64,000 bases of DNA, from positions 186,001 to 250,000 of IMG/VR virus record IMGVR_UViG_3300031951_000003. The stretch is one strand, 5' to 3'. The position numbers were made by a program, and so were the translations under genes. A model generated the notes under the pieces. The model saw nothing but the letters and a program-made list of their open reading frames with translations, searched no databases and was not told the DNA's origin. Shown one piece after another: positions 31,372-60,808 of this stretch (positions within the stretch are counted from its first letter, which is position 1; the number at the start of each line of letters is the position of its first letter).

Positions 31372-31430
31372 TGTGGATAAATAGTTATTCCCACCCCCTA
31401 TACATTTATCAACAGATAGGATGTGGAAAA
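31372..31430. promoter_or_regulatory. DnaA-box-like cluster 1
   Basis: TGTGGATAA (perfect, 31372-31380), TTATCAACA (31406-31414), TGTGGAAAA (31422-31430). Confidence 0.55.
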
Positions 31431-31445
31431 GTTAATTTGGTTTTG

Positions 31446-31940
31446 TCAGAATGTCCGATTTCGTTCAGTGAATACTGCGTCAGATGGTATCTCTTTTATC
31501 TCGGGGATAATCCATGACCCCACCACGAAGCTTCTACCTTTACGTATCTTAAGGTCTTCGGGGATTGCGTTAGATGTGGATACAGATTTCATTGTCTTCT
31601 CCACGTCGGCTTGTATATCTTGTGTCTGTTCTCTATCCACATTAAACATTGTGGCGAGGTATGAGGTTTCATAAGTGTTTGGGAGGTGATGACCAAGTCT
31701 TTTATCCAAATAATATCTTAGGTATGATACCATTGGCCACCCCGTTTGTTTTTGTAGGATGAAGGGGTCCACGAACACGTCGAGGAAGATGAGGTTATAT
31801 TGGTTTATCTCCTCATCACTTGGGACCCTGATATCTATAATCCATGGGTATTCCCTTTTAAGAATCCTTTTGATTAACTTATACTCATAGGAGCTTTCCA
31901 CTTCATCTTTGGTTACATAGTTATGTTGTTCGACAGGCAT
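31446..31940 (-). CDS. Hypothetical protein
   Basis: ILKREYPWIIDIRV; ATAAATA upstream. Confidence 0.55.
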   Translation of the reverse strand: MPVEQHNYVTKDEVESSYEYKLIKRILKREYPWIIDIRVPSDEEINQYNLIFLDVFVDPFILQKQTGWPMVSYLRYYLDKRLGHHLPNTYETSYLATMFNVDREQTQDIQADVEKTMKSVSTSNAIPEDLKIRKGRSFVVGSWIIPEIKEIPSDAVFTERNRTF

Positions 31941-33001: not shown

Positions 33002-33028
33002 AGTTTAGGAACATATAAAAATAAAGAA

Positions 33029-33210
33029 TGTGGAAAACTTCTTTTGGTCCTGACGCTATGTCAGTGTGGAAAACTTTTCTTTCGTTGGGGGTAAATGTGG
33101 ATAACTTTTTTTGATTTTGTCATAATGTCAGGGGAGCGTTGCATAGGGGATAATCCCCTCGACCCATTTTCCCCCACTTTTCCCCACCACTCATTCCCAC
33201 ATTTTCCCAC
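33029..33210. promoter_or_regulatory. DnaA-box-like cluster 2 with pyrimidine-rich TTCCC(C)AC repeats
   Basis: TGTGGAAAA at 33029 and 33065, TGTGGATAA (perfect) at 33096-33104, AGGGGA-taa-TCCCCT at 33145-33159. Confidence 0.55.
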
Positions 33211-33513
33211 CACTTATGGTCATGTAGATAGTGTAAAGACCACTTTTTCCCCTCTCACGGTATCAGGAAGACCAGTTTTTTAATATGTATGTTTCTTAGC
33301 AAAAAAAGGAAGATTAAGTATGAGACGGGGGGAGTGAACGTAGTGAACCTTTAATGTGTATTAATTAACCTTCAACGAGAGGGACATTTTGTCTCCCTGT
33401 AGCGATGGACAAGTAGTATATGGTGGTAAAATGTGGAGGTAAAAAGTTATAGATATGATTATAGTTTATCACGATAGTGTTGTATATTGTAATCATGTTT
33501 ATAACTTATCATA

Positions 33514-33589
33514 TATCGTTTCGTTATACGATATGTCATTATATCGTGTGAATATACGATTGTCTATAATATCGTTTCATTAGACGATT
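33514..33589. repeat. Three tandem palindromes TATCGT-N8-ACGATW at 28-bp period
   Basis: Copies at 33514-33533, 33542-33561 and 33570-33589. Confidence 0.85.
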
Positions 33590-33690
33590 ATGTAATCACC
33601 ATCTCATCTGTCCCCTCACTGAGTGGGGGGAACTTATGGGTGGGGGAAAAGTCAAGTTCATATACTGTGTAGTCTTACTTTTTTATGTAA

Positions 33691-33712
33691 AAGTAAAGTT
33701 ATAACTTTACTT
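33691..33712. promoter_or_regulatory. 22-bp perfect palindrome, probable operator
   Basis: AAGTAAAGTTATAACTTTACTT, 21 bp upstream of ATG 33734. Confidence 0.6.
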
Positions 33713-33733
33713 AAATGGGTGATACTTATTACT

Positions 33734-34192
33734 ATGATATACTTTATAGAAAATTTAGAAACCAAACACATTAAAATTGGTTTCACTACAGATATTAAAA
33801 ATAGACTAAGTAACTTACAGACATCTTCACCATATGAGTTAAAAGTGTTAGCGGTTTGTGAAGGAAATGATAAAACCGAAAAAGAATTACATATTAAATT
33901 TAACGATTACCATACCAGAGGAGAGTGGTTTAATCCTAATAAAGAATTGATTGACTATATCAGTCAGTTCCCCCCATATAAGTCAGATAACAAACAACAC
34001 GGTAATTTAGCTAGTCTAAGAAAACAGAAGAAGATGAGTATGGAAGAAGTTGGTAAAAAAATGAAGATAAGTAAACAAGCTGTTTCAGATATCGAAAAGA
34101 GATACGAATATGGTAATATAACAATCAAAAACCTTAGGTCATATCTTGATGCTATTGGTTATGATGTTACTATAGTTTTCTCGCCGAAATAA
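33734..34192 (+). CDS. T5orf172 (GIY-YIG-like) domain fused to XRE-family HTH
   Basis: MIYFIE...IKIGFT...RLSNLQTSSPYEL...EKELH..F.....RGEWF; LASLRKQKKMSMEEVGKKMKISKQAVSDIE. Confidence 0.8.
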   Translation: MIYFIENLETKHIKIGFTTDIKNRLSNLQTSSPYELKVLAVCEGNDKTEKELHIKFNDYHTRGEWFNPNKELIDYISQFPPYKSDNKQHGNLASLRKQKKMSMEEVGKKMKISKQAVSDIEKRYEYGNITIKNLRSYLDAIGYDVTIVFSPK

Positions 34193-34285
34193 GATTATAC
34201 AACAAGTGAGTGAATGAAGGACACTCCCGAACCTTTAGGTGAGGGATGTATTGTGTCCGTAGTGAATGAACTTGTTGTATAATCT
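34192..34285. repeat. Structured element copy 1 (nested hairpin)
   Basis: 16-bp perfect outer stem AGATTATACAACAAGT/ACTTGTTGTATAATCT; inner GGACAC/GTGTCC, TCCC/GGGA and ACC-ttta-GGT. Confidence 0.8.
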
Positions 34286-35036
34286 AAACTTGATAAACTT
34301 CATATGAGATAGGGATAGATAGTGATTGTTTGATGTTATCAATCATGCCCGTTCTTTGTTTAACATTTCCCCATGTAATGAAGAAAAGACCATTTTCTAA
34401 CTGAATGAAGCTATTTCTGTTCATTTTTTTTGGGTCTGAAGTCATAGACGAAGGGAGTTCATCTTTTGTCTTTTTGAAGTAATTGGGTAACTTGGTAAGT
34501 AAAACTTCAGGTGAGAAATTGGTTGAGAGATACTGACCAAGAAGAACATATCTATCAATAGTTGTATCCGCGACAAATTCAGTATTATCAATAAAGATTT
34601 TGATTGAAGACCTGACTTTTTTGATATTTTCTAAAATCTCAATTTTTTGAGTTTGAGTGGTCCCTGAATCTGAGACAATTGATTCAGTTAAATCAAGTTC
34701 AAGTGTTTCGGGAAAATAATTGGTAAGTTTAGTAATTTTTTTGTGTAATAAATCCTCATCATCACAATCAAACCATTCAGTGGTAATACTTTTTCTATCG
34801 TTATATTCTTTAGTAACTCTATATTCTTCGAAACATGCGTGGAGGGCCTTTTCTAAGGAACTCATGTGATTAGTTTGGAATATACGTATAAACACAACGT
34901 CCACAGGCATGTGTGTAGAATTTAACGCGGTTTCTCGGGATTTATAATCTATGGACCGACCTAACTTATAATAATTCGTTATAAAATTACCAAGATGGTC
35001 AACCATTCTTCCAATGTAACAATAACCTTGACTCAT
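34284..35036 (-). CDS. T5orf172 (GIY-YIG-like) nuclease with C-terminal putative DNA-binding domain
   Basis: GYCYIG...YYKLGRS...RETALNST...LEKALH...TEWF. Confidence 0.75.
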   Translation of the reverse strand: MSQGYCYIGRMVDHLGNFITNYYKLGRSIDYKSRETALNSTHMPVDVVFIRIFQTNHMSSLEKALHACFEEYRVTKEYNDRKSITTEWFDCDDEDLLHKKITKLTNYFPETLELDLTESIVSDSGTTQTQKIEILENIKKVRSSIKIFIDNTEFVADTTIDRYVLLGQYLSTNFSPEVLLTKLPNYFKKTKDELPSSMTSDPKKMNRNSFIQLENGLFFITWGNVKQRTGMIDNIKQSLSIPISYEVYQV

Positions 35037-35175
35037 AAATTATTTTATGAGCTAAAATAAAAAATATTTTTCTTCTTACAAAAAATTATTTTACCCCCTC
35101 ACTTATGCGGGGGGTTTATTAGGTGGGGGGTTATCTTTAATCTTGTATGAATCAACAAGGATTACTTAACAGTTC

Positions 35176-35276
35176 GATTATACAATTAAAGAGTGAAGTG
35201 AATGAGGACACTTCCGAACCGAAGGTGAGGAATGTATTTGTGTCCGATATGAACTGAACGAATTAATTGGATAATC
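35176..35276. repeat. Structured element copy 2
   Basis: GATTATACAATTAA/TTAATTGGATAATC outer stem (1 mismatch); GGACAC/GTGTCC, TTCC/GGAA and ACC-gaa-GGT. Confidence 0.8.
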
Positions 35277-35292
35277 TTTTTTTACTATATTT

Positions 35293-35547
35293 ATGGATAT
35301 GGGAGAAGCACTTCAGAAGATATTAGAACAATTGATTGTAAAGAAGTATAATTCACTTATTGGAGTGGATGTTTCTAACTTTTATATGAATGAGGATTGG
35401 TATAGAATTACTTATTATTTTAATCCACCACTTGAGCATAAAGATGCTATTGAGATTATGGAAGAGACCGCGACTTTATATAAAATGCTTGGTCCGAGTG
35501 GTAAGGGAGACATAATCGTTGATTTTAAAAAAGTTGAGGATAAATGA
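35293..35547 (+). CDS. Hypothetical protein
   Basis: Sense TATTTAT at the start (true ATG possibly 35299). Confidence 0.55.
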   Translation: MDMGEALQKILEQLIVKKYNSLIGVDVSNFYMNEDWYRITYYFNPPLEHKDAIEIMEETATLYKMLGPSGKGDIIVDFKKVEDK

Positions 35548-35861
35548 CCGTCGAACAAGAAGTAAATAGGATTGTTAAATTTGTTAAGGAATTATATTCC
35601 CCCTATGATGTTTATGTTCAGGGCAGTAAAATGGGTAAGTATAGTATCATATTTTACTTCGAGGAAATCGACGACAGGTATATTGTTAATCCGCAGCATA
35701 AGGACCAAAAACAACATAAAGCCAACATGTTTAAACGCGAAATTAGAGACCAAATATATAACTTCTTCGGAATCAAAACCACGGGACTGCAACCAAATGA
35801 TTATTTTTCCCCACACGAAGAACACCCTATAACAATCGTTGTAACCTATGTAAATAAATAA
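35544..35861 (+). CDS. Hypothetical protein resembling the payload of 55357
   Basis: IIFYF...MFKREIRDQIYNFFGI. Confidence 0.55.
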   Translation: MTVEQEVNRIVKFVKELYSPYDVYVQGSKMGKYSIIFYFEEIDDRYIVNPQHKDQKQHKANMFKREIRDQIYNFFGIKTTGLQPNDYFSPHEEHPITIVVTYVNK

Positions 35862-35863
35862 TC

Positions 35864-36247
35864 ATGAGATATATTATAACACAAACACAACTTCATTCTT
35901 TGATATACAGATACTTGAATGAAATGTTCTCTAACAAAGACTTTAGAAAAGAAATTAATCCATATGTAAAAGACGGTAATACATGGAGGATTAATATGTT
36001 TGATAATGATGGTAATGAACTCATGAACTATTTTTGGTTTGGGCCAGGTAATTCTTGGGACGACGACGAAGATACTCCTCCACACAATGGTGTTGGTAGT
36101 CTTCACATCCACCACAGAATTGTTGATGCACTGAAAAAGACATTCTCCATTAGAGAAAGCAAGGTTCTTGATATCGTTGCTGATTGGGTTAGTGAGACTT
36201 TGGGTGGTGATATTGATGAGATTGACATTTACCCCACCAAAAACTAA
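35864..36247 (+). CDS. Leader-A, W-F family-like protein
   Basis: MRYIITQTQLHSLIYRYLNE; IVADWVSETL. Confidence 0.6.
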   Translation: MRYIITQTQLHSLIYRYLNEMFSNKDFRKEINPYVKDGNTWRINMFDNDGNELMNYFWFGPGNSWDDDEDTPPHNGVGSLHIHHRIVDALKKTFSIRESKVLDIVADWVSETLGGDIDEIDIYPTKN

Positions 36248-36582
36248 TATTCTAACTTCTTATTAAAATCTAATACCGTAGAGACTTCTCCTGTCCATCC
36301 ATCGGCAAGATAACCGTTTTTCAAATTCTTGATTGCATATATTGCTTCCGATTCTGTTTTGAATACAATTGCTGTGGTGTGACAATCACCCCATCCACAA
36401 ACCATTTCTTTGATTGTATACCATCTTTCCCAAAAGAATAAAAACTTCTTCTTAACTTGTATGGTATATTGTTCTTTTTGGACATCACACCTTTCATAAT
36501 AAGTGTGTTTTACGGTTCTAAATAATGGAATGTTTTTCATATGTTCAAATCTAATATTGAATATGAAAAAGAAAACCCCCAC
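36244..36582 (-). CDS. Hypothetical protein
   Basis: ORF track; true start probably internal MKNIPLF. Confidence 0.5.
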   Translation of the reverse strand: MGVFFFIFNIRFEHMKNIPLFRTVKHTYYERCDVQKEQYTIQVKKKFLFFWERWYTIKEMVCGWGDCHTTAIVFKTESEAIYAIKNLKNGYLADGWTGEVSTVLDFNKKLEY

Positions 36583-41003: not shown

Positions 41004-41588
41004 TCAGAATGGATAATCATAGTTTAACATACTACAGTAGTCTTGAGAACAGGAAAAAATAATATCTTTGATTTCCTGAGTGAAATATTTGTCAACGTCA
41101 TTTATGACATCGGTATCATTATCTTTAATAGAACATAAATTTCTAATTTGAACTAATTTATCGAAATCGGAATTTGCTATGAAAGGTATTTTATTGTAAT
41201 CATCATAAAGATTTTCGATTCTGATAAAATAATCCGGAGTCCTTTCCTTAAATGGCCAAATTATACATCTCAATGTTGTTTTAGGAAAGTTCATATAAAA
41301 ATAGTTCTGAAAACTTTCAGGACTCCAAATATTCGGATTTTTGTGATTAAATTTATAAAAAGATAAAATTCTTGAAAATGGATTTCGAGCCGTAGATAAA
41401 AAAATATAATCTTTGTGTCCGCTTGGATAATCGAAGGAATGGTTATTGTTTAACGGGATTACTTTCAAACCATCAGGCGTTTTTTTGTAAGTTGAAAATC
41501 CGTAGTTTTTCAAAACTTTTACACAATGAACCGAACCTGTTCTAGCTTGTAACCAAACAAATGATTTATTAATTTCTGATATGTTCAT
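41004..41588 (-). CDS. Sulfotransferase family 2-like protein
   Basis: [28 protein letters not shown]. Confidence 0.7.
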
Positions 41589-42793
41589 ACGAAAACTTTG
41601 GGTATTTCATCCCAAGATGTGGTATACTTTTGGGACATGAAATCTTGTCTCATCTCCCACTCTTTTTTTTTGTTTATGGGTGCCTGAACTAACTGTATTG
41701 AAGTTGTAAATAAAGTGGGTTGTTCTATATTCTCGGGCATAAGTTCATTAAATATAATTCCACATTTTTTATAATTCTTACTTGAGTTATAAATTTTCTT
41801 TAAGTGTGGATATACCTGGCTCCATATTTCATCCACATCTCTTGTTTGTTTTTGAAATGTAATCTGTTTACTCGAGTAATGTTTTTCACCTTTATGAACA
41901 TTTCCACTTAAAAATATGGTTGCTCGGTTTGGTGATATTTCATTATCAATAAGTTTTTTCACCCCGTTTTTAATATATGTATACATGGCCTCAGATAATT
42001 GATTAAAATCATTTACGTCTTGTCCGAATGACCTTGTTGATGCTATGTTCTTTTTTAACTTTGGTAATGGTTTTACAGGATGACAATACATACCAAGAAG
42101 TTCACACTTTGTTCTAAGTCCATTTACATTCATCATTTTTCTGACAATACTATCAGACATCATAACAAATTGACCAACACTCTCAACTCCTAAGTTTTTT
42201 AATTTTTTATTCCACTGTCTACCAATACCCCAAACCTCATCTACAGATATTGTGTAAAGTGATTCCCTAAAATCATGCAAACTCCAATATGAACAAACAC
42301 CATCGTATGATTGTTGTTGTTTGGCTATATGTGATGTAAGTTTGGCTAATGTCTTATTTGGACCGACACCTATTGAAACAGGAACTCCTGTAAGTCTTTT
42401 AACCTCATTACGAATAAGATGTAATCTATCTAAAAGTTCATCATCGGGTATATTAGAAAAATCCACAAAACACTCATCAATAGAATAGACCTCAACTTCT
42501 TTAGCATACTTCTTTATGGTTGTCATGACTCTGTCTGACATATCTCCATACAAGTTATAGTTTGATGAATAAACACAGAATCTATGTTCTTCCATGAAGT
42601 CTTTTTTCATAAAGAAAGGTTCACCCATTTTGATTCCAAGGGCTTTGGCTTCTTGAGAGCGGGCAATAACACAACCATCGTTGTTAGATAAAACAACTGT
42701 AGGTCTCCCAATGGAGATTGGATTGAAAACTCTTTCACAACTAACGTAAAAATTGTTACAATCTACAATACCGATTTTTTTATTGGACTGCAT
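41585..42793 (-). CDS. umuC: Y-family DNA polymerase V catalytic subunit
   Basis: [42 protein letters not shown]-terminal [16 protein letters not shown]. Confidence 0.93.
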
Positions 42794-45799: not shown

Positions 45800-46906
45800 T
45801 TAGTCAAGTTGCTTAACCAAATTTAACGCTTGTGCAATTATTTGGTGCATGTCGTAATAAACGTATGTTGCTAATCTACCACCAAAATAATAATTTGGTA
45901 AATCATTCGTCAATTCTTTATACTTTTCGTAAATTAGGGTATTTCTATCGTCTCTTATTGGATAGTAAGGTTCATTCTCACCATTATAATCTGCAGGGAA
46001 TTCATAACTAATAATTGTTCCTTTTTGATTTTGTGGGTCAAACCACTTATGTTCTAATATTCTTGTGTATGGTGTTTCTCGGTCAGTATAGTTAACCACG
46101 GGAACCCCTTGAAAATTATCTTTTTCCAAACGTTTTGTTTCCCATTCCAAACTTCTATATTCTAAATTTCCATAAAGGTAGTCAAAAAATCTATCTATGG
46201 GACCTGTGTAGATTACCTTTTGAGCTAGCGAATCATGATATAACTTCGATTCGAAGTAGTCTACCCCTAATTCAACATCACATTTCTGTAACATCTTTTC
46301 AAATATTTGAGTATAACCTCCAATTGGCATCCCTGTATATTTGTCATTGAAGTAATTACTATCCCAAGTAAACCTTAAAGGTAATCTTTTGATAATTGAC
46401 GGGGGTAGTTCCTGACAGTTTTTGTTCCATTGTTTTTCAGTATATCCCTTGATGAGTTTCTGATAAATTTCATCACCCACCATTGACATTGCCTGTTCTT
46501 CGAGATTGGTTATCTTTCCCTTATATTTAATCTCCTCAATAATTTGTTTCGCTCTTTCAGGTTCGTTGACTTTCCAAAGTTGATTGAATGTCCACATGTT
46601 GAATGGTAATGTAAACATTTCGCCCTTGTAGTTCGCAATTACATTATGTGTGTATTGTCTAAACTCGGCAAATTGATTCACGTAATCCCAAATATGTTTG
46701 TCGTTGGTATGGAAAATATGTGCACCATATTTGTGAACGTGAATACCGTCCACGTTTTCAGTATAACAGTTTCCACCTATTACAGGTCTTTTATCAATTA
46801 CCAAACATTTTTTTCCTTTCTTAGTTAGTTCGTAAGCACAAACGGAACCGAATGGTCCCGCCCCTACTATCAAATAATCATATTTTGGAAAATTCAATAA
46901 AATCAT
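45800..46906 (-). CDS. glf: UDP-galactopyranose mutase
   Basis: YDYLIVGAG, HKYGAHIFHT, YRSL, EPYYP, GRLATYVYYDMHQ. Confidence 0.95.
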   Translation of the reverse strand: MILLNFPKYDYLIVGAGPFGSVCAYELTKKGKKCLVIDKRPVIGGNCYTENVDGIHVHKYGAHIFHTNDKHIWDYVNQFAEFRQYTHNVIANYKGEMFTLPFNMWTFNQLWKVNEPERAKQIIEEIKYKGKITNLEEQAMSMVGDEIYQKLIKGYTEKQWNKNCQELPPSIIKRLPLRFTWDSNYFNDKYTGMPIGGYTQIFEKMLQKCDVELGVDYFESKLYHDSLAQKVIYTGPIDRFFDYLYGNLEYRSLEWETKRLEKDNFQGVPVVNYTDRETPYTRILEHKWFDPQNQKGTIISYEFPADYNGENEPYYPIRDDRNTLIYEKYKELTNDLPNYYFGGRLATYVYYDMHQIIAQALNLVKQLD

Positions 46907-48057
46907 TTGAAATCAAAATTGAAACTTTCAGAATCAATAACATGTTCCTCAGTTTTTCTTGTCAATCTCTCTTTGTATTCAACAAGAAAATTCCCTGTGT
47001 TGGTATAAGCCCTACTTTCAATTAAAAAGGATTTGACAGGGAAAGGGTTTTTTCTTTCAGGTTCCATCATCTTGTCGATTACCTGAATTGCTTCTTGAGT
47101 TTTACCTAATGAATCATAATGGAATGCAAGATAAAGTAAGTTTTCATTTCTATCTTTACTAAACTCGCTCGCTAACTTGAAAACCTCCTCGGCTTTCGCA
47201 TGTTCACCCAAGAAATCATAAGACCATCCCATAACAATCAAACCAAAGTAAGCCATCTCATCTTCATATTTTGGTTTTTTCTCAACACCCCAAACATGTG
47301 TCAATTCCATGAATCTTTCATAATACCACAAAGACCTTCTAGCATATTCTTCTGAGTGTTTTCTTCCGAAAGGTAATTCGCTCGAGTTCCCATAACAATC
47401 AGCATAACTCTTAGCAATATACCAAAGGTGATAGTAATCTTCATGAACCTTGTTTCCTACAACTTTATCAATTTCCAGTTCGAGTGCATCTCTTAAAAAC
47501 TTTCTTGGTGCCGCCCAAGTATCACCATCTTGTGAAACGATGTGTCTGAGCCCATAGGGCATGTTAATTCTTTGAAAATCTTCACCAATTTCAGGAAGAT
47601 GAATTGTTTCGTGTCTTTTGTCGTGTGCAAAAAACCAAGGTAATTTAGCATTCCAAAACCAAGTTCTGAAATAATTTGTATCGCCGGCTTGTGCTGCAAT
47701 ATTGTAACTTTGTATTTGTGTGTTTTCTAAAATTGACCAATCGAAATCTGAATCAACATGAAGGGTCTCATCCGCATCCATCCTCAAAACCCAGTCACAA
47801 CCATGTTCTGATGAAAGACATTTTTGTAGGGTATGGTCTCTATTCCAACCAGGAAAATTCCAATCGATTTTATAAGTGAAACCTGGAATGTTTTTGGTTT
47901 GAAAAAAAACATTAATTTTGGACTCTGTGTCATCGTTTCCATTACATTGGATTACATAGTAATCAATATAAGGTGCCACTGATTCTAACATTCTCATGAT
48001 GGTTTTGGATTCATTTCCAACCATCGAGTTCAATACAATTTTTGCTTTCTTATTCAT
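46903..48057 (-). CDS. GT2-like glycosyltransferase with TPR-like C-terminus
   Basis: NESKTIMRML; WVLRMDADE (DxD); RHETIH; helical repeats. Confidence 0.75.
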   Translation of the reverse strand: MNKKAKIVLNSMVGNESKTIMRMLESVAPYIDYYVIQCNGNDDTESKINVFFQTKNIPGFTYKIDWNFPGWNRDHTLQKCLSSEHGCDWVLRMDADETLHVDSDFDWSILENTQIQSYNIAAQAGDTNYFRTWFWNAKLPWFFAHDKRHETIHLPEIGEDFQRINMPYGLRHIVSQDGDTWAAPRKFLRDALELEIDKVVGNKVHEDYYHLWYIAKSYADCYGNSSELPFGRKHSEEYARRSLWYYERFMELTHVWGVEKKPKYEDEMAYFGLIVMGWSYDFLGEHAKAEEVFKLASEFSKDRNENLLYLAFHYDSLGKTQEAIQVIDKMMEPERKNPFPVKSFLIESRAYTNTGNFLVEYKERLTRKTEEHVIDSESFNFDFK

Positions 48058-49297
48058 AAGTGTAGTTCATTACTCCTTCTTCGTCGAAGTATTTTTTTAT
48101 TGGAACGTGGTTTTGAAATTTGTGGGAGTGTCCTCTCTCTTCATTCCAATACCAATCATCGAAACCAAGCTCTTTGATTCTATCATGAATCCTTTTGTCG
48201 TAGTGGTCTCTGATTAATCTCGCCCTTCTGTTTATATCATAAGCATTGTTATCAACAGTGCTATTACGATTGTTGTATTGTAAGTATAACATTCTTTTCA
48301 CGTGAATAAACCTTGTATGTAAGAATGTTCTGACAATCATTTCAAAGTCATCGGCTACCGGGGTTAGTTTGTTGTGACCACCGAGTTCATGATAGAGCTT
48401 TCTTTCCCACATTCTTATGTGGTCGGGCATTGAGATGTTGAAACGGATTGTCAATGGATTGATATCTGGATACCAATGTGCCAGATACTTTTGTCCATCA
48501 GCATAAACCCACGAGTGTCCTGCATAACCGAAGTCAAAAAAGTTATCAGGTCTAGCATACCAATTACCTGACCAATCATGGTCATAAGACTTCATTTCAC
48601 CATCATCGTATAACTCACATACATCAGTATACAAGAAACCAGCATCAGGGTATTTTTCGATTGCGTCATTACAAACCTCCAAACAATCACTTATGAGTGC
48701 ATCATCGTGGTCCAATTCACAAAGCCAATCTCCATCACACAACATAGCCGCCCTGTTTTTAGCTAACCCTACATTACCCCCTGAAGTGGGATATATTTTG
48801 TGTATCTTTACTCTGTAATCAATGTTCGAAAATTCCTTCAACAAGTTCCAAGTCTCGTCATCTGGCGAATCATCAACAACAACCCATTCCCAATTTGTGA
48901 ATGTTTGATTCTTCAAACTTTCATAAGTTCTCCTTATTCTCTCTCCTGTTTTATATGTTGGTGTAAAAATTGAGAATCTCGGTCTTTGATAGTCAGTATT
49001 TTTGAATACCGTTTGACAAACAACTATGTTTGCTAAAACGTTATCCTGAGGTAAGAATTCGTAATGAACATGTTTTTGTTTTAAGAAATAATGAGGAACT
49101 TCGATTTCATCTATAAAGGACAGGATAACATCAGGTTGATATTTCGTATAATCCCCCGCCACATCATTGGTATAGGGTAATGCATAAATGGTGACTTCAT
49201 CATAAAGTCTTTCCTCGAAGTAAATATCAGATTCTAAAATGAATTTCCCTGTGGAAACCCAACCGTAAACTATCGCACTAGGTTTTTTTGTCTTCAT
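48050..49297 (-). CDS. GT2 glycosyltransferase
   Basis: FSIFTPTYK, WEWVVVDDS, ELDHDD, ADDFEM. Confidence 0.88.
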   Translation of the reverse strand: MKTKKPSAIVYGWVSTGKFILESDIYFEERLYDEVTIYALPYTNDVAGDYTKYQPDVILSFIDEIEVPHYFLKQKHVHYEFLPQDNVLANIVVCQTVFKNTDYQRPRFSIFTPTYKTGERIRRTYESLKNQTFTNWEWVVVDDSPDDETWNLLKEFSNIDYRVKIHKIYPTSGGNVGLAKNRAAMLCDGDWLCELDHDDALISDCLEVCNDAIEKYPDAGFLYTDVCELYDDGEMKSYDHDWSGNWYARPDNFFDFGYAGHSWVYADGQKYLAHWYPDINPLTIRFNISMPDHIRMWERKLYHELGGHNKLTPVADDFEMIVRTFLHTRFIHVKRMLYLQYNNRNSTVDNNAYDINRRARLIRDHYDKRIHDRIKELGFDDWYWNEERGHSHKFQNHVPIKKYFDEEGVMNYTYE

Positions 49298-59311: not shown

Positions 59312-59343
59312 CAAATATAAGACACAAACCCTATTATGCCAAA
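59312..59343 (-). promoter_or_regulatory. Bacteroidota sigma-A promoter (followed by a TATTTAT motif)
   Basis: TTTG-N20-TATATTTG, then TATTTATAGATATG. Confidence 0.7.
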
Positions 59344-60599
59344 AGTTTTTTTCCTGCTCTTTCTCTATGAAACTTTATTGCAAACCTGTGAACCTCTTCT
59401 TGAATAACTCCGAGAACGGACCAATCCATTGGATGTTGTTTACCATCAGTTGTATGAACGGTCTGTGACCTGTGTTTTTGGTCTTTCGAAATTGATATCA
59501 AATCAATCCTGTTGGTAAGTCCAAGAGACTCAAATACCTTCTTTGCAACGTTTAATTGACCAATTCCCCCATCAATTAGAACAAGGTCAGGTAGTTGACC
59601 CTTTTCATCCAAGAGTCTCTTAAAACGTCTGTAAACCACTTCCTCGAATGACAGACAATCATTACCATTGTTTGACTCCTCACGAATGATATACTTACGG
59701 TATTCACTCTTGAGAGGTTTGTTATTCACATATCTTACAGAGGCCGCAACATTTGAGTCACCCTGATTGTGTGAGTTGTCAAACGCCTCGATAATCAAAG
59801 GAAGATTTTTAAGACCCAAAACCTTTTTTATACCAAAGGCAATCTTGTTATATTTCCTTACACGGATGGGTTCGAGTTTCTCTTCAAGTTTTTTGATTTG
59901 ATTAACCCTGTTGAGGTAGTTGTCCGCCTTTTCGAACTCCAAGTTCTTGGCAAACTCATGCATTTTTCCTGTGAGAAACACCTTTAACATCTTATAATCA
60001 AGTTCGAATATCTTTCGAACAATTAATTGATACTTCAGATATTCAAGGTTCGATTCCAAGGCAATGCAGGGTGCGTTACAACGACCAATATGATACTCAA
60101 GACATGGTTTGAATTTACCTGCCCCGATGTTTTCTTGATTCAAAGTATAGGAACAAGTTCTAAGTGGAAGGATGTCGTTGATAAGTTCCATAACTTCATA
60201 CGCCCTTTGACCTGAGGTGAAGTTGATTCCACAGGTGTCCTCACCTTTCCCATGAGTTATTTGAAGTTTGGAGTATGGTCCACCAGTCAAAGACAAATGC
60301 CAAGTTCTTGACTTATCATCTTTACCTTTGATGTTGAACTTGGGTTTGTAAATTTTGATGAGTTCTTCCTCCATGATGAGAGCCTCAGCCTCAGATGAAG
60401 CAATCTGATACTCAACGTCACGTATTTGTTCAACAAGGGTCCTTGTCTTCTTGTCATCGTGTTTCTTATTGAAATAAGACGCAACACGTTTGGGAAGGAA
60501 CTTGGACATCCCCACATATATTACCTGGTCTTTGCCATCTTTGTAGATGTAACAACCAGGGTATTTGGGAGCTGATTTTATTTTTTCTTTGATGTCCAT
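59334..60599 (-). CDS. uvrC: UvrC-like excinuclease lacking the C-terminal HhH domain
   Basis: PGCYIYKD...IYVG; CLEYHIGRCNAPC; IEAFDNSH; PDLVLIDGG; EVHRFAI; start moved to MDIKEK. Confidence 0.88.
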   Translation of the reverse strand: MDIKEKIKSAPKYPGCYIYKDGKDQVIYVGMSKFLPKRVASYFNKKHDDKKTRTLVEQIRDVEYQIASSEAEALIMEEELIKIYKPKFNIKGKDDKSRTWHLSLTGGPYSKLQITHGKGEDTCGINFTSGQRAYEVMELINDILPLRTCSYTLNQENIGAGKFKPCLEYHIGRCNAPCIALESNLEYLKYQLIVRKIFELDYKMLKVFLTGKMHEFAKNLEFEKADNYLNRVNQIKKLEEKLEPIRVRKYNKIAFGIKKVLGLKNLPLIIEAFDNSHNQGDSNVAASVRYVNNKPLKSEYRKYIIREESNNGNDCLSFEEVVYRRFKRLLDEKGQLPDLVLIDGGIGQLNVAKKVFESLGLTNRIDLISISKDQKHRSQTVHTTDGKQHPMDWSVLGVIQEEVHRFAIKFHRERAGKKLLA

Positions 60600-60808
60600 T
60601 CTTTTCTGTGTTTGTAAAACCAATAGGAGTGAATGATGATAACGCACGAATTTACAACAATTGTCGGACCTGCCGAAATTCCGAATCCATAAACTAACCA
60701 AAAAATTGCGCCAACCGTGTTGACCGCTCTAAGACGGAAAACGTCCTCAATTAGGAATGAACCTAAAATGAGGACGCTCCCGATATATCCATATATTTCC
60801 CACATCAT
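60578..60808 (-). CDS. Small inner-membrane protein (YgjV-like)
   Basis: Three TM segments; RLRAVNTVGAIFWLVYG. Confidence 0.6.
   Translation of the reverse strand: MMWEIYGYIGSVLILGSFLIEDVFRLRAVNTVGAIFWLVYGFGISAGPTIVVNSCVIIIHSYWFYKHRKEWTSKKK

What the first reader, a model, noticed from the sequence alone, without database searches (positions are those of the whole stretch)
34192..35276. Covarying ~95-nt nested-hairpin element duplicated around a GIY-YIG-like gene
Seen: two direct copies flank 34284..35036. They share ends GATTATACAA...TTG(T/G)ATAATC, an invariant GGACAC/GTGTCC stem and purine-rich GAGTGAA/GTGAA-type internal loops. Compensatory changes are present: CAAGT/ACTTG versus TTAA/TTAA in the outer stem, TCCC/GGGA versus TTCC/GGAA in the inner stem, and loop TTTA versus GAA. 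Copy 1 fills the whole gap between two convergent stop codons. Related GA-rich fragments occur near 33330-33405. Inference: structure is under selection, so this is either an unrecognised ncRNA or RNA-processing element, or the ssDNA end of a small mobile unit mobilised by the nuclease (REP/MITE-like).
Basis: partly seen in the sequence, partly recalled or inferred. Interest (0 to 1): 0.72.

Follow-up and report, generated by a model that had tools for sequence, protein, structure and literature searches.

The report
Origin-linked G·A-rich hairpin in jumbo phages
The two repeats are real copies of a conserved, strand-specific ~90-base hairpin that a group of freshwater jumbo phages keeps, one or two per genome, beside a region that looks like a replication origin; it is not moved by the neighbouring nuclease genes, and whether it acts as DNA or RNA is still open.

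Summary
Copies at 34193-34284 and 35176-35276 (+) fold into long hairpins well beyond shuffles, and no Rfam family matches.

Pattern scans and two covariance models found 20 members in related freshwater phage contigs. Sixteen of 32 pairs change on both sides and 91% of cells stay paired. All 20 fold better on the + strand. Short helices alternate with conserved tandem G·A pairs.

The mobile-element reading fails. Each genome has only 1-2 copies. Most relatives have no T5orf172 gene nearby, and homologues of the 250-aa nuclease lack the hairpin.

In 13 of 13 contexts the hairpin lies 0-1 kb to the right of a conserved ~650-nt non-coding region, in one orientation. That region holds DnaA-box clusters, an AT-rich palindrome and three palindromic iterons. 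Homology between relatives breaks exactly at the hairpin's edges.

Best reading (about 0.4): a single-stranded DNA signal next to an origin, like ssi or A-site hairpins. It also serves as a crossover point for gene cassettes, including the two nuclease genes here. The main rival is a structured RNA (about 0.3). Interest is moderate.

The parts
34193..34284 (+). Hairpin copy 1 ('type A', 92 nt). From outside in: terminal stem, tandem G·A pairs alternating with 2-bp helices, 6-bp GGACAC/GTGTCC stem, 6-nt 3' bulge, 4-bp stem, tandem G·A, 3-bp stem, loop TTTA.
   Evidence: Best hit of both covariance models (117 and 110 bits). It is 95-99% identical to copies in seven metagenome contigs with different flanks.
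35176..35276 (+). Hairpin copy 2 ('type B', 101 nt). Same plan with one extra G·A plus 3-bp module in the lower stem. The apex is C-GAA-G. It is followed by a run of seven T (35277-35283).
   Evidence: 76.8 bits. Type B relatives are L041 and L031:8016-8114.
33734..34192 (+). T5orf172/MUG113 plus HTH_3 gene. The start is probably the ATG at 33734; the ORF as listed opens at a GTG at 33623. It lies between the D4 hairpin and copy 1, a position that other relatives leave empty or fill with unrelated genes.
   Evidence: MUG113 1.5e-15, HTH_3 1.6e-9.
34284..35036 (-). T5orf172/MUG113 gene (250 aa), a GIY-YIG-superfamily homing-endonuclease-like gene, lying between the two hairpin copies.
   Evidence: MUG113 2.9e-11. 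Its homologues at 49-75% identity sit in other contexts without the hairpin.
33002..33650 (.). Conserved non-coding region (NCR), always to the left of the hairpin. It holds DnaA boxes at 33029-33037, 33065-33073 and 33096-33104 (minus strand; the last is a perfect TTATCCACA). It also holds C-rich blocks, an AT-rich palindrome at 33438-33510, and three palindromic iterons (TATCGT-N8-ACGATA) at 33513-33588. Inferred to be a replication origin or master control region.
   Evidence: 72-83% nucleotide identity in 11 relatives; alignment; DnaA-box counts; repeats. No RNA covariation was found.
33612..33646 (+). 'D4' G+C-rich hairpin followed by a G-run (GGTGGGGG). In relatives with the simplest layout it lies 0-63 nt before the hairpin, directly abutting it in L119.
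35095..35130 (+). 'D4-prime', a second copy of the G+C hairpin plus G-run, 45 nt before copy 2. The pair D4-prime plus copy 2 resembles the layout seen in relatives.
   Evidence: (family D4).
31372..31710 (.). Second cluster of DnaA-box-like 9-mers (six within about 340 bp, one perfect), 1.3 kb to the left of the NCR.
   Evidence: The relative G001 has three perfect boxes at the corresponding place.
35288..35294 (+). TATTTAT, the phage's gene-start motif (promoter-like), between copy 2 and the next gene. That gene's start is then probably the ATG at 35299.
   Evidence: The motif peaks at -11 to -13 and at -19 to -23 from start codons, and 131 of its 193 genomic copies lie in the 8% of the genome that is non-coding.
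33366..33420 (+). Stretch of the NCR with weak similarity to the 3' half of copy 1. It may be an old relic copy; it is not detected by the models.
   Evidence: (1 of 500 shuffles).

Best explanation
SHOWN. The element is a conserved cis-acting hairpin of about 90 nt, formed by the + strand only. It is built of short Watson-Crick helices interleaved with sheared-type tandem G·A pairs, each in a pyrimidine-GA-purine context. It occurs once, rarely twice, per genome in a clade of freshwater jumbo phages. It always lies just to the right of a conserved non-coding region that carries DnaA-box clusters, an AT-rich palindrome and three iterons, and always in the same orientation to it.

INFERRED.
1. 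That non-coding region is a replication origin that uses host DnaA.
2. When replication opens the DNA rightwards, the + strand is the displaced, lagging-strand template and snaps into this hairpin.
3. G·A stacking and C-GNA-G or C-GNNA-G mini-hairpin apexes keep it folded against SSB.
4. Its invariant terminal stem shows a DnaA-box-like duplex, which marks a site for helicase loading or priming. This would work like single-strand initiation signals: the A-site of the ABC primosome, IncQ ssiA, or primosome assembly sites.

SHOWN, secondary consequence. The hairpin is a 90-bp island of near-identity in a hypervariable region, and it is the point where gene cassettes are exchanged between phages. 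In this phage the two T5orf172 homing-endonuclease-like genes sit in cassettes bounded by hairpin copies. The second, divergent copy (type B beside type A) probably arrived by such an exchange rather than by transposition; that last point is inferred.
For: Structure:
- 91% of cells are paired. 16 of 32 pairs change on both sides, in 55 cells against 16.6 +/- 3.0 in shuffles (0 of 500 reach it). Slid controls give 0-4 such cells.
- GGACAC/GTGTCC becomes GGACCA/TGGTCC or GGGAC/GTCCC.

Strand specificity:
- 20 of 20 members fold better on the + strand.
- Reverse-strand model scores are at most 26 bits against 70-110 on the + strand.

Copy number:
- Two copies in the 321-kb genome.
- One confident copy in each of five related IMG/VR records, including a complete 326-kb genome.

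Linkage to the non-coding region:
- It is present to the left in the same orientation in 13 of 13 contexts that include it. It abuts the hairpin directly or within a few bases in L119 and L031.

Origin-like features:
- Two of the genome's five perfect TTATCCACA boxes lie within 1.7 kb here. Seven perfect boxes lie within about 1.1 kb in relative G001.
- The iterons are 95-97% identical in L031 and L041, while the rest of the region is about 78% identical.
- The region shows no RNA covariation, which points to a DNA-level role.

Outside transcription units:
- In six loci a minus-strand gene and a plus-strand gene point away from the element. Each has its own TATTTAT motif within about 15-40 nt of the element's ends. 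One of these variants still shows a compensatory change, A-U to G-C.

DNA-type features:
- Apexes are C-GAA-G, C-GTA-G, C-GATA-G, C-GTTA-G or C-GGTA-G in 10 of 20 members. These fit the GCGNAGC/GCGNNAGC DNA mini-hairpin. RSF1010 ssiA contains CCGAAGG, the same heptamer as the apex of copy 2 (PMC13037366).
- Read on the minus strand, the 3' arm is TTATCCACC in 10 of 20 members, one mismatch from a DnaA box.
- The A-site is an ssDNA hairpin with a DnaA box in its stem that loads DnaB (PMC6127211).
- The phage has a DnaB-like helicase and no primase detectable with five Pfam families.

Crossover role:
- Identity between relatives drops from at least 90% to about 30% exactly at the left or right edge of the element.
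Against: - No experiment or read-depth evidence shows that the non-coding region is an origin. Cumulative GC skew gives no signal there.
- The DnaA-like 9-mers in the stem are imperfect, with one mismatch in half of the members and two in the rest. Position 8 of the box varies, and a hit of this quality somewhere in 90 nt has roughly a 0.1 chance.
- The hairpin can be pushed up to about 1 kb from the non-coding region by inserted genes, and it can be duplicated.
- G·U wobble pairs are common, and they exchange with G-C and A-U as in RNA helices.
- Predicted stability is much higher with RNA parameters than with DNA parameters.
- Where the upstream gene ends at the element (six contexts), gene and element are co-oriented, as for a 3'-UTR element.
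- Type A apexes (TTTA) and two AAA apexes are not of the mini-hairpin type.
- The members are related sequences with roughly eight distinct variants, and the covariation alignments were fitted to the model.
Confidence: 0.4

Rival explanations
1. It is a structured RNA. Either it is a small non-coding RNA, or it is a UTR element read from the + strand that binds a protein or directs processing or 3'-end stabilisation, in the way the intergenic RNase III hairpins of T7 do.
For: Very stable RNA folds (-20 to -41 kcal/mol). G·U pairs exchange with G-C and A-U, and compensatory changes are clean. Unpaired purines and the 3' bulge (TGTATT and variants) are conserved, as in protein-binding RNAs. The element is co-oriented with the upstream gene in all contexts where a gene ends at it. 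Copy 2 is followed by T7.
Against: No conserved promoter lies upstream, and the left flanks are unrelated. In six loci the element sits between two divergent genes that each have their own promoter-like motif. In L027 both neighbours are on the opposite strand. Orientation tracks the non-coding region, not the genes. Apexes such as GATA, GTTA and GGTA are not GNRA. The terminal 10 bp never vary, which is unusual for an RNA helix. No Rfam match. No RNA run holding the region was listed.
Confidence: 0.3
2. It is only a recombination linker or insulator of the PeSL kind. That would be a conserved stem-loop upstream of a promoter that supplies homology for cassette shuffling, with no further function.
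For: Homology breaks exactly at its edges, and left and right modules occur in mixed combinations. A promoter-like TATTTAT motif and a start codon follow within 0-40 nt in most contexts. PeSLs are defined as a stem-loop plus an early promoter at indel junctions (PMC4122927).
Against: PeSLs occur in many copies per genome; this element occurs once or twice. Hundreds of genes here have the TATTTAT motif without the hairpin. A mere homology patch would not keep G·A pairs, a strand-specific fold and compensatory changes. Its position beside the non-coding region is fixed.
Confidence: 0.12
3. It is a double-stranded DNA binding site. Inverted DnaA-box-like ends, perhaps with internal GTGAA-type repeats, would be bound by DnaA or a phage regulator without any hairpin forming.
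For: The ends are invariant (GATTAT-N-CA on both strands) and contain TTATNCA. DnaA-box clusters lie nearby. In type A, AGTGAATGA occurs as a direct repeat in both arms.
Against: The interior changes freely as long as complementarity is kept; 7 of the 10 pairs in helices 3 and 4 covary. Duplex binding does not predict that. The internal GTGAA repeats are not conserved in type C. The asymmetry between strands would have no meaning in duplex DNA.
Confidence: 0.08
4. It is the end of a small mobile unit (REP/MITE-like, or an ssDNA transposon end) that the adjacent T5orf172 nuclease mobilises.
For: In this one genome the only two hairpins and the only two T5orf172 genes lie together within 1.7 kb. 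Direct repeats flank the 250-aa gene.
Against: There are 1-2 copies per genome, always at one syntenic locus. 11 of 13 relatives' contexts have no T5orf172 gene. Homologues of the nuclease are found without the hairpin. The two copies belong to different old lineages (types A and B), so they are not a fresh duplication. No tyrosine recombinase is present. The element is absent from 185,579 bacterial and archaeal species genomes.
Confidence: 0.03
5. It is an ordinary intrinsic transcription terminator.
For: It is a long hairpin. Copy 2 is followed by seven T, and copy 1 lies between convergent genes.
Against: 19 of 20 members have no T-run. The genome's terminators form a distinct class, CCCCTC...GAGGGG with flanking runs of A and T. 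Conserved G·A pairs and a 6-nt bulge are not needed for termination. There are only 1-2 per genome.
Confidence: 0.03

Closest known systems
A-site of the ABC primosome, an ssDNA hairpin with a DnaA box in its stem (Masai et al. 1990; Masai and Arai 1995, as cited in PMC6127211)
   Same: It is a single-strand hairpin. Its stem shows a DnaA-box-like duplex (TTATCCACC on one arm in half of the members). It lies beside a DnaA-box cluster. The proposed role is helicase loading or priming on SSB-coated DNA.
   Different: The box is imperfect and variable. The hairpin is far longer and is interrupted by about eight G·A pairs. No biochemical evidence exists. It comes from a jumbo phage, not a plasmid, and the phage has its own DnaB-like helicase.
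IncQ (RSF1010) ssiA/ssiB and the complementary-strand origin hairpins of G4, St-1 and alpha3
   Same: These are strand-specific hairpins next to an iteron-type origin. Their apexes are of the DNA mini-hairpin type. Copy 2 has CCGAAGG, as in ssiA, and a relative has C-GTTA-G, as in St-1 and alpha3 (PMC13037366).
   Different: There is no sequence similarity beyond the apex. No RepB'-type primase was detected, although the control for that search was uninformative. Only one strand carries a signal here, whereas IncQ has one on each strand. Type A apexes are TTTA.
PeSL elements of T4-type phages (Arbiol et al. 2010; Comeau et al. 2014, PMC4122927)
   Same: A stem-loop lies just upstream of a promoter-like motif and a start codon, in a hypervariable region. 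It sits precisely at the insertion, deletion and replacement junctions between related phages, and homing-endonuclease genes lie nearby.
   Different: PeSLs are short G+C stem-loops with sigma-70-type promoters, present in many copies. This element is about 90 nt, G·A-rich, strand-specific and covarying, has 1-2 copies, and is tied to one non-coding region.
Intergenic RNase III processing hairpins of T7-like phages (from general knowledge; not tested here)
   Same: They form a family of irregular intergenic hairpins with conserved internal loops, between genes on the transcribed strand.
   Different: Those occur about ten times per genome and always inside transcripts. This element is nearly single-copy and in several relatives lies between divergent promoters.
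Integron attC sites
   Same: They are imperfect, strand-specific single-strand hairpins at cassette boundaries, where structure is conserved more than sequence.
   Different: attC sites occur one per cassette, with extrahelical bases and R/L boxes, and they need an IntI tyrosine recombinase. Here there are 1-2 copies, G·A pairs instead of extrahelical bases, and no tyrosine recombinase in the genome.

Membership tests
Any Rfam 15 family | A covariance-model score at or above the family's gathering threshold | tested here: not met
   No hit in the 64-kb window at gathering thresholds. No hit overlapping either copy even at E up to 10.
Intrinsic (rho-independent) terminator | A G+C-rich stem directly followed by a run of T/U | tested here: not met
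   Only copy 2 has a T-run; 19 of 20 members have none. The genome's real terminators are a different motif.
REP / MITE-like repeat | Many dispersed copies per genome | tested here: not met
   Two copies in 321 kb. One confident copy in each of five related records. All lie at one syntenic locus.
REP / MITE-like repeat | Association with the mobilising enzyme across genomes | tested here: not met
   Most relatives lack a T5orf172 gene at the locus. Loci encoding homologues of the nuclease lack the hairpin.
PeSL (promoter-early stem-loop) | Located at indel or replacement junctions between related phages | tested here: met
   Identity drops from at least 0.9 to about 0.3 at the element's edge. 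Left and right modules occur in mixed combinations.
PeSL (promoter-early stem-loop) | Composite of a stem-loop, a sigma-70-like early promoter, a Shine-Dalgarno site and a start codon | tested here: inconclusive
   A TATTTAT motif and an ATG follow in most contexts. That motif is not a sigma-70 promoter and is not part of the conserved element. No Shine-Dalgarno enrichment was found.
PeSL (promoter-early stem-loop) | Multiple copies spread through hyperplastic regions | tested here: not met
   1-2 copies per genome.
A-site / ssi-type single-strand initiation signal | A stable hairpin formed by one specific DNA strand | tested here: met
   In silico only. 20 of 20 members are more stable on the + strand. 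DNA-parameter folds give z -5 to -6.6. Covariation is shown.
A-site / ssi-type single-strand initiation signal | A DnaA box within the hairpin stem (A-site) | tested here: inconclusive
   TTATCCACC (one mismatch) in 10 of 20 members and two mismatches in the others. Chance alone could give this about one time in ten.
A-site / ssi-type single-strand initiation signal | Location at or next to a replication origin | tested here: inconclusive
   It is adjacent to DnaA-box clusters, an AT-rich palindrome and iterons. Origin function itself is unproven, and GC skew is uninformative.
A-site / ssi-type single-strand initiation signal | Supports priming or helicase loading on SSB-coated ssDNA | not testable with these tools
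   Needs a biochemical assay of the M13 ssDNA-to-RF type.
Kink-turn RNA motif | A 3-nt bulge immediately followed by tandem G·A / A·G pairs | tested here: not met
   By inspection. The tandem G·A pairs lie in symmetric 2x2 loops. The only bulge (6-7 nt) is flanked by Watson-Crick stems.
Integron attC | A cognate tyrosine recombinase and one site per cassette | tested here: not met
   No PF00589 match in the genome. 1-2 sites per genome.
T5orf172 / MUG113 (GIY-YIG superfamily) for the two flanking genes | A Pfam domain score above the curated cut-off | tested here: met
   58 and 44 bits against a 22.3-bit cut-off (MUG113). 41 and 37 bits against a 20-bit cut-off (T5orf172).

The most novel reading that the evidence does not exclude
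This would be a previously undescribed class of origin-flanking single-strand signal. It is a long hairpin zipped by about eight sheared G·A pairs and capped by a mini-hairpin, with a DnaA-box-like terminal stem. A clade of uncultured freshwater jumbo phages would use it to hand a host-DnaA-opened origin over to helicase and primase. That would make it a natural phage counterpart of the plasmid A-site, and it would pin down the replication origin of this phage group. The evidence equally allows a new structured RNA class confined to these phages.
Probability: 0.3. Interest if true: 0.65.

Novelty: new variant of a known kind. Interest (0 to 1): 0.5.

Why it matters
Origins of replication and their accessory signals are essentially unmapped in jumbo phages. 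A conserved, covarying hairpin beside a DnaA-box and iteron region gives a concrete, testable candidate for where and how replication starts in one uncultured group.

It also shows how a small conserved non-coding island can act as the seam at which gene cassettes, homing-endonuclease genes among them, are swapped.

Structurally, a natural 90-nt helix in which tandem G·A pairs alternate with 2-3 bp helices is an unusual object, whether it turns out to be DNA or RNA. The covariance model built here can be used to find more members.

Tried and rejected
- Rfam, at gathering thresholds and permissive thresholds: nothing. tRNA/tmRNA scan: none.
- blastn-short and regular-expression scans of the whole genome for further copies: none.
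- Three core-pattern scans of IMG/VR found only near-identical copies of the same phage, plus two chance hits in high-GC contigs. An end-anchored pattern and the metagenome scan were what found the relatives.
- Search of cultured-phage records with 3.5 kb around the element: no match.
- Contexts of homologues of the 250-aa nuclease: no hairpin. In L016 the gene is instead flanked by a different duplicated intergenic sequence.
- RNA evidence: no RNA run holding the region was listed.
- DNA reads and contigs laid on the region gave one variant hairpin and a possible joint, 33615 to 35176, in a relative. What lies between was not known, and I could not read the contig.
- The idea that the terminal TTGTATAAT / GGATAAT sequences are outward promoters was dropped. 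The phage's own gene-start motif, TATTTAT, lies outside the element on both sides.
- A large structured RNA spanning the non-coding region was rejected, because the covariation term was -0.1.
- GC-skew test for an origin: uninformative; skew follows gene orientation.
- Scans of 185,579 bacterial and archaeal species genomes for the element and for the non-coding region gave zero hits and two chance hits.
- The kink-turn, sarcin-ricin, hammerhead, attC and protelomerase-site readings were considered by inspection and dropped (see the membership table). The A-U to G-C to U-A changes at the middle of the 3x3 loop argue for a plain Watson-Crick pair there.
- Internal DnaA-like 9-mers (AGTGAATGA) are present in type A but not conserved in type C, so they were not used as evidence.
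Full report
**What the window is.** The window is bases 186001-250000 of a 321,139-bp virus record with terminal repeats and 35% G+C. It recurs in lake and freshwater metagenomes. It encodes about 380 ORFs. There is no Shine-Dalgarno enrichment, but a strongly placed TATTTAT motif lies 11-13 or 19-23 nt before start codons, and 131 of its 193 copies fall in the 8% of the genome that is non-coding. Its ordinary terminators are a run of A, CCCCTC...GAGGGG and a run of T.

**The observation.** Copy 1 (34193-34284) and copy 2 (35176-35276) lie on the + strand and share 84% of aligned columns.
- Both fold into one long hairpin: -43.6 kcal/mol (z -8.4) and -32.5 kcal/mol (z -5.0) as RNA. The reverse strands fold less well. 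DNA parameters give the same ranking.
- The GGACAC...GTGTCC core occurs twice, against 0.01 expected.
- Copy 1 fills the space between the stop codon of a T5orf172+HTH gene (+) and that of a T5orf172 gene (-). These are the only two such genes in the genome.

**Anatomy.** From the outside in, the parts are as follows.
- A terminal stem whose outer 10 bp never vary and carry a conserved A·G mismatch.
- A lower rod in which 2-3 bp helices alternate with 5'-GA-3'/3'-AG-5' tandem mismatches. Every one has a pyrimidine before and a purine after the GA.
- A 5-6 bp G+C stem.
- A conserved 6-7 nt bulge on the 3' side.
- A 4-5 bp stem, another tandem G·A (or G·A, pair, A·G), then 2-3 bp and a 3-4 nt loop.

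The + strand is 57-65% purine.

**The family.** Core-pattern scans of IMG/VR returned only identical copies of the same phage.
- A relaxed core pattern in metagenome contigs returned 63 loci. Eleven of them, all low-G+C, carry true homologues.
- A covariance model built from eight type A copies found these and two divergent extra copies.
- An end-anchored pattern in IMG/VR, filtered with the model, added six more.
- A second model, R2, and a scan anchored on the non-coding region added L125.
- In all there are 20 members of three main types: A, B (with an extra lower-stem module) and C (with a longer inner stem).

**Covariation.** On the 19-member alignment, 91% of cells are standard pairs and 16 of 32 pairs change on both sides.
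- The count is 55 such cells, against 16.6 +/- 3.0 after shuffling (0 of 500 reach it) and 0-4 when partners are slid by 1-3 columns.
- Helices 3 and 4 are 99% paired, with 7 of their 10 pairs covarying.
- The middle of the 3x3 loop goes from A-U to G-C to U-A.
- Caveats: the alignment was fitted to the model, and the sequences are related, with about eight distinct variants.

**What it is not.**
- Not a known RNA family.
- Not the genome's terminator type; only copy 2 has a T-run.
- Not a dispersed repeat. There are two copies in this genome and one confident copy in each of five related records, one of them a complete 326-kb genome.
- Not tied to the nuclease. Most relatives have no T5orf172 gene at the locus, and contigs encoding 49-75% identical homologues of the 250-aa protein have no hairpin.
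- Not present in 185,579 bacterial and archaeal species genomes. No tyrosine recombinase is present.

**Context: the key result.** In every context that reaches far enough left (13 of 13), the hairpin lies 0-1 kb to the right of a ~650-nt non-coding region (window 33002-33650). That region is 72-83% identical across relatives and always in the same relative orientation. It contains four kinds of feature.
- DnaA boxes. The window has two TTTTCCACA and one perfect TTATCCACA within 75 bp, and a second cluster lies 1.3 kb to the left. Only five perfect boxes exist in the whole 321 kb. Relative G001 has seven perfect boxes in about 1.1 kb.
- C-rich blocks and an AT-rich palindrome (33438-33510).
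- Three palindromic 20-bp iterons spaced 28 bp apart. These are 95-97% identical in L031 and L041, while the rest of the region is about 78% identical.
- A G+C hairpin plus a G-run ('D4').

RNAalifold finds no covariation in this region, so a DNA-level role is likelier. I infer a replication origin or master control region. GC skew neither supports nor contradicts that.

In the simplest layouts (G001/L119, L121, L122 and the first copy in L031) the order is: non-coding region, D4, hairpin, TATTTAT, rightward genes. Different phages have different insertions between D4 and the hairpin:
- this phage has the T5orf172+HTH gene;
- six contigs have a minus-strand 113-aa gene;
- others have one to three small + strand genes.

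**Crossover seam.** Relatives that share a left flank have four unrelated right flanks, and relatives that share a right flank have different left flanks. Identity in 30-nt bins falls from at least 0.9 to about 0.3 exactly at the element's edge, while the element itself stays 95-99% identical.

Genomes with two copies carry two different types (A+B here, C+B in L031, C+A in L049), always co-oriented. So the duplication here most probably came from an exchange that brought in a cassette bounded by a hairpin. That cassette holds the 250-aa nuclease gene plus a second D4.

**DNA or RNA?**

For DNA:
- Orientation follows the non-coding region, not the neighbouring genes.
- In six loci the element sits between divergent genes that each have their own TATTTAT motif outside it. 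In L027 both neighbours are on the other strand.
- The terminal stem is invariant.
- Half the apexes are C-GNA-G or C-GNNA-G. These match the very stable DNA mini-hairpin found at the G4/St-1 complementary-strand origins and in RSF1010 ssiA, whose CCGAAGG is the apex of copy 2. They do not match GNRA.
- The 3' arm read on the minus strand is TTATCCACC in 10 of 20 members. This recalls the A-site, an ssDNA hairpin with a DnaA box that loads DnaB.
- A hairpin on the + strand to the right of an origin lies on the displaced, lagging-strand template of a rightward fork, where such signals act. This is an inference from established replication geometry.
- The phage has a DnaB-like helicase and no primase detectable with five families.

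For RNA:
- Folding energies are much stronger with RNA parameters.
- G·U pairs are frequent.
- The element is co-oriented with every gene that ends at it.
- Copy 2 is followed by T7.

No RNA run holding the region was listed, so the question stays open.

**Verdict.** The repeat is real and the structure is selected. It belongs to a new, narrowly distributed family. The nuclease-mobilised reading is wrong.

I put about 0.4 on an origin-proximal single-strand DNA signal that also serves as a recombination seam. I put about 0.3 on a structured RNA, and the rest on simpler readings. Interest is moderate: this is a well-supported new structured element with an unusual G·A architecture and a testable link to jumbo-phage replication, but it is confined to one uncultured clade and has no functional data.

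Noticed in passing
window 33002-33650 and 31372-31710: There is a conserved ~650-nt non-coding region with DnaA boxes, an AT-rich palindrome, three palindromic iterons (TATCGT-N8-ACGATA) and C-rich blocks. A second DnaA-box cluster lies 1.3 kb to the left. The two clusters bracket two or three small conserved genes, like a bipartite origin. This is a candidate replication origin of this jumbo phage.
   Followed up: partly
whole genome; for example window 35288-35294: The motif TATTTAT sits 11-13 or 19-23 nt before start codons, is about 27-fold enriched there, and has 131 of its 193 copies in non-coding DNA. There is no Shine-Dalgarno enrichment. It is probably the phage's promoter or start signal, implying very short leaders.
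   Followed up: partly
window 16564, 17040, 50656, 51356, 56045 and elsewhere in the genome: These are bidirectional intrinsic terminators of one type: a run of A, CCCCTC, loop, GAGGGG, a run of T. The D4 hairpins at 33612 and 35095 are variants without proper T-runs, followed by a conserved G-run (GGTGGGGG).
   Followed up: partly
window 35293-36250 and related loci L031, L041, L049, L070, L073, L120, L123: The region to the right of the hairpin is a hypervariable array of small paralogous genes. There are several ~85-aa proteins with a PKYPWI-like motif, ~105-aa proteins starting MKYIITE, and ~113-aa proteins starting MNL.ENI.RIK. Their number and order differ between relatives. Functions are unknown.
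   Followed up: no
window 33436-33523 (run X1): A contig in a lake metagenome skips 86 nt here and has GACAA instead. The AT-rich palindrome of the non-coding region is therefore replaced in a co-occurring relative, which matches the poorly aligned stretch.
   Followed up: no
window 33615 to 35176 (run X1): One 710-nt contig joins the left non-coding region to a type B hairpin, skipping 1560 nt (both nuclease genes and copy 1). What lies between was not known. It may be an empty-site relative.
   Followed up: no
window 33330-33350; L027, L033, L031, L122 (alignment): Inside the non-coding region, a block (GAGTGA ... GAAC) carries an inserted perfect small hairpin with a TTTA loop in four relatives. 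The stems differ between them (CTTGTCC/GGACAAG versus GTCCCC/GGGGAC). This is a second small covarying hairpin flanked by GA motifs.
   Followed up: no
L016:300-420 and L016:1160-1290: In a metagenome contig, a 75%-identical homologue of the 250-aa T5orf172 protein is flanked on both sides by a near-identical ~75-nt intergenic sequence unrelated to the hairpin. Duplicated intergenic DNA around this nuclease gene may be a general by-product of how it inserts.
   Followed up: no
window 41585-42793, 45800-49297, 59334-60701: Auxiliary genes are present: a Y-family (ImpB/UmuC-like) polymerase, a UDP-galactopyranose mutase with a family 2 glycosyltransferase, and a UvrC-like protein (GIY-YIG plus RNase H domain).
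   Followed up: no
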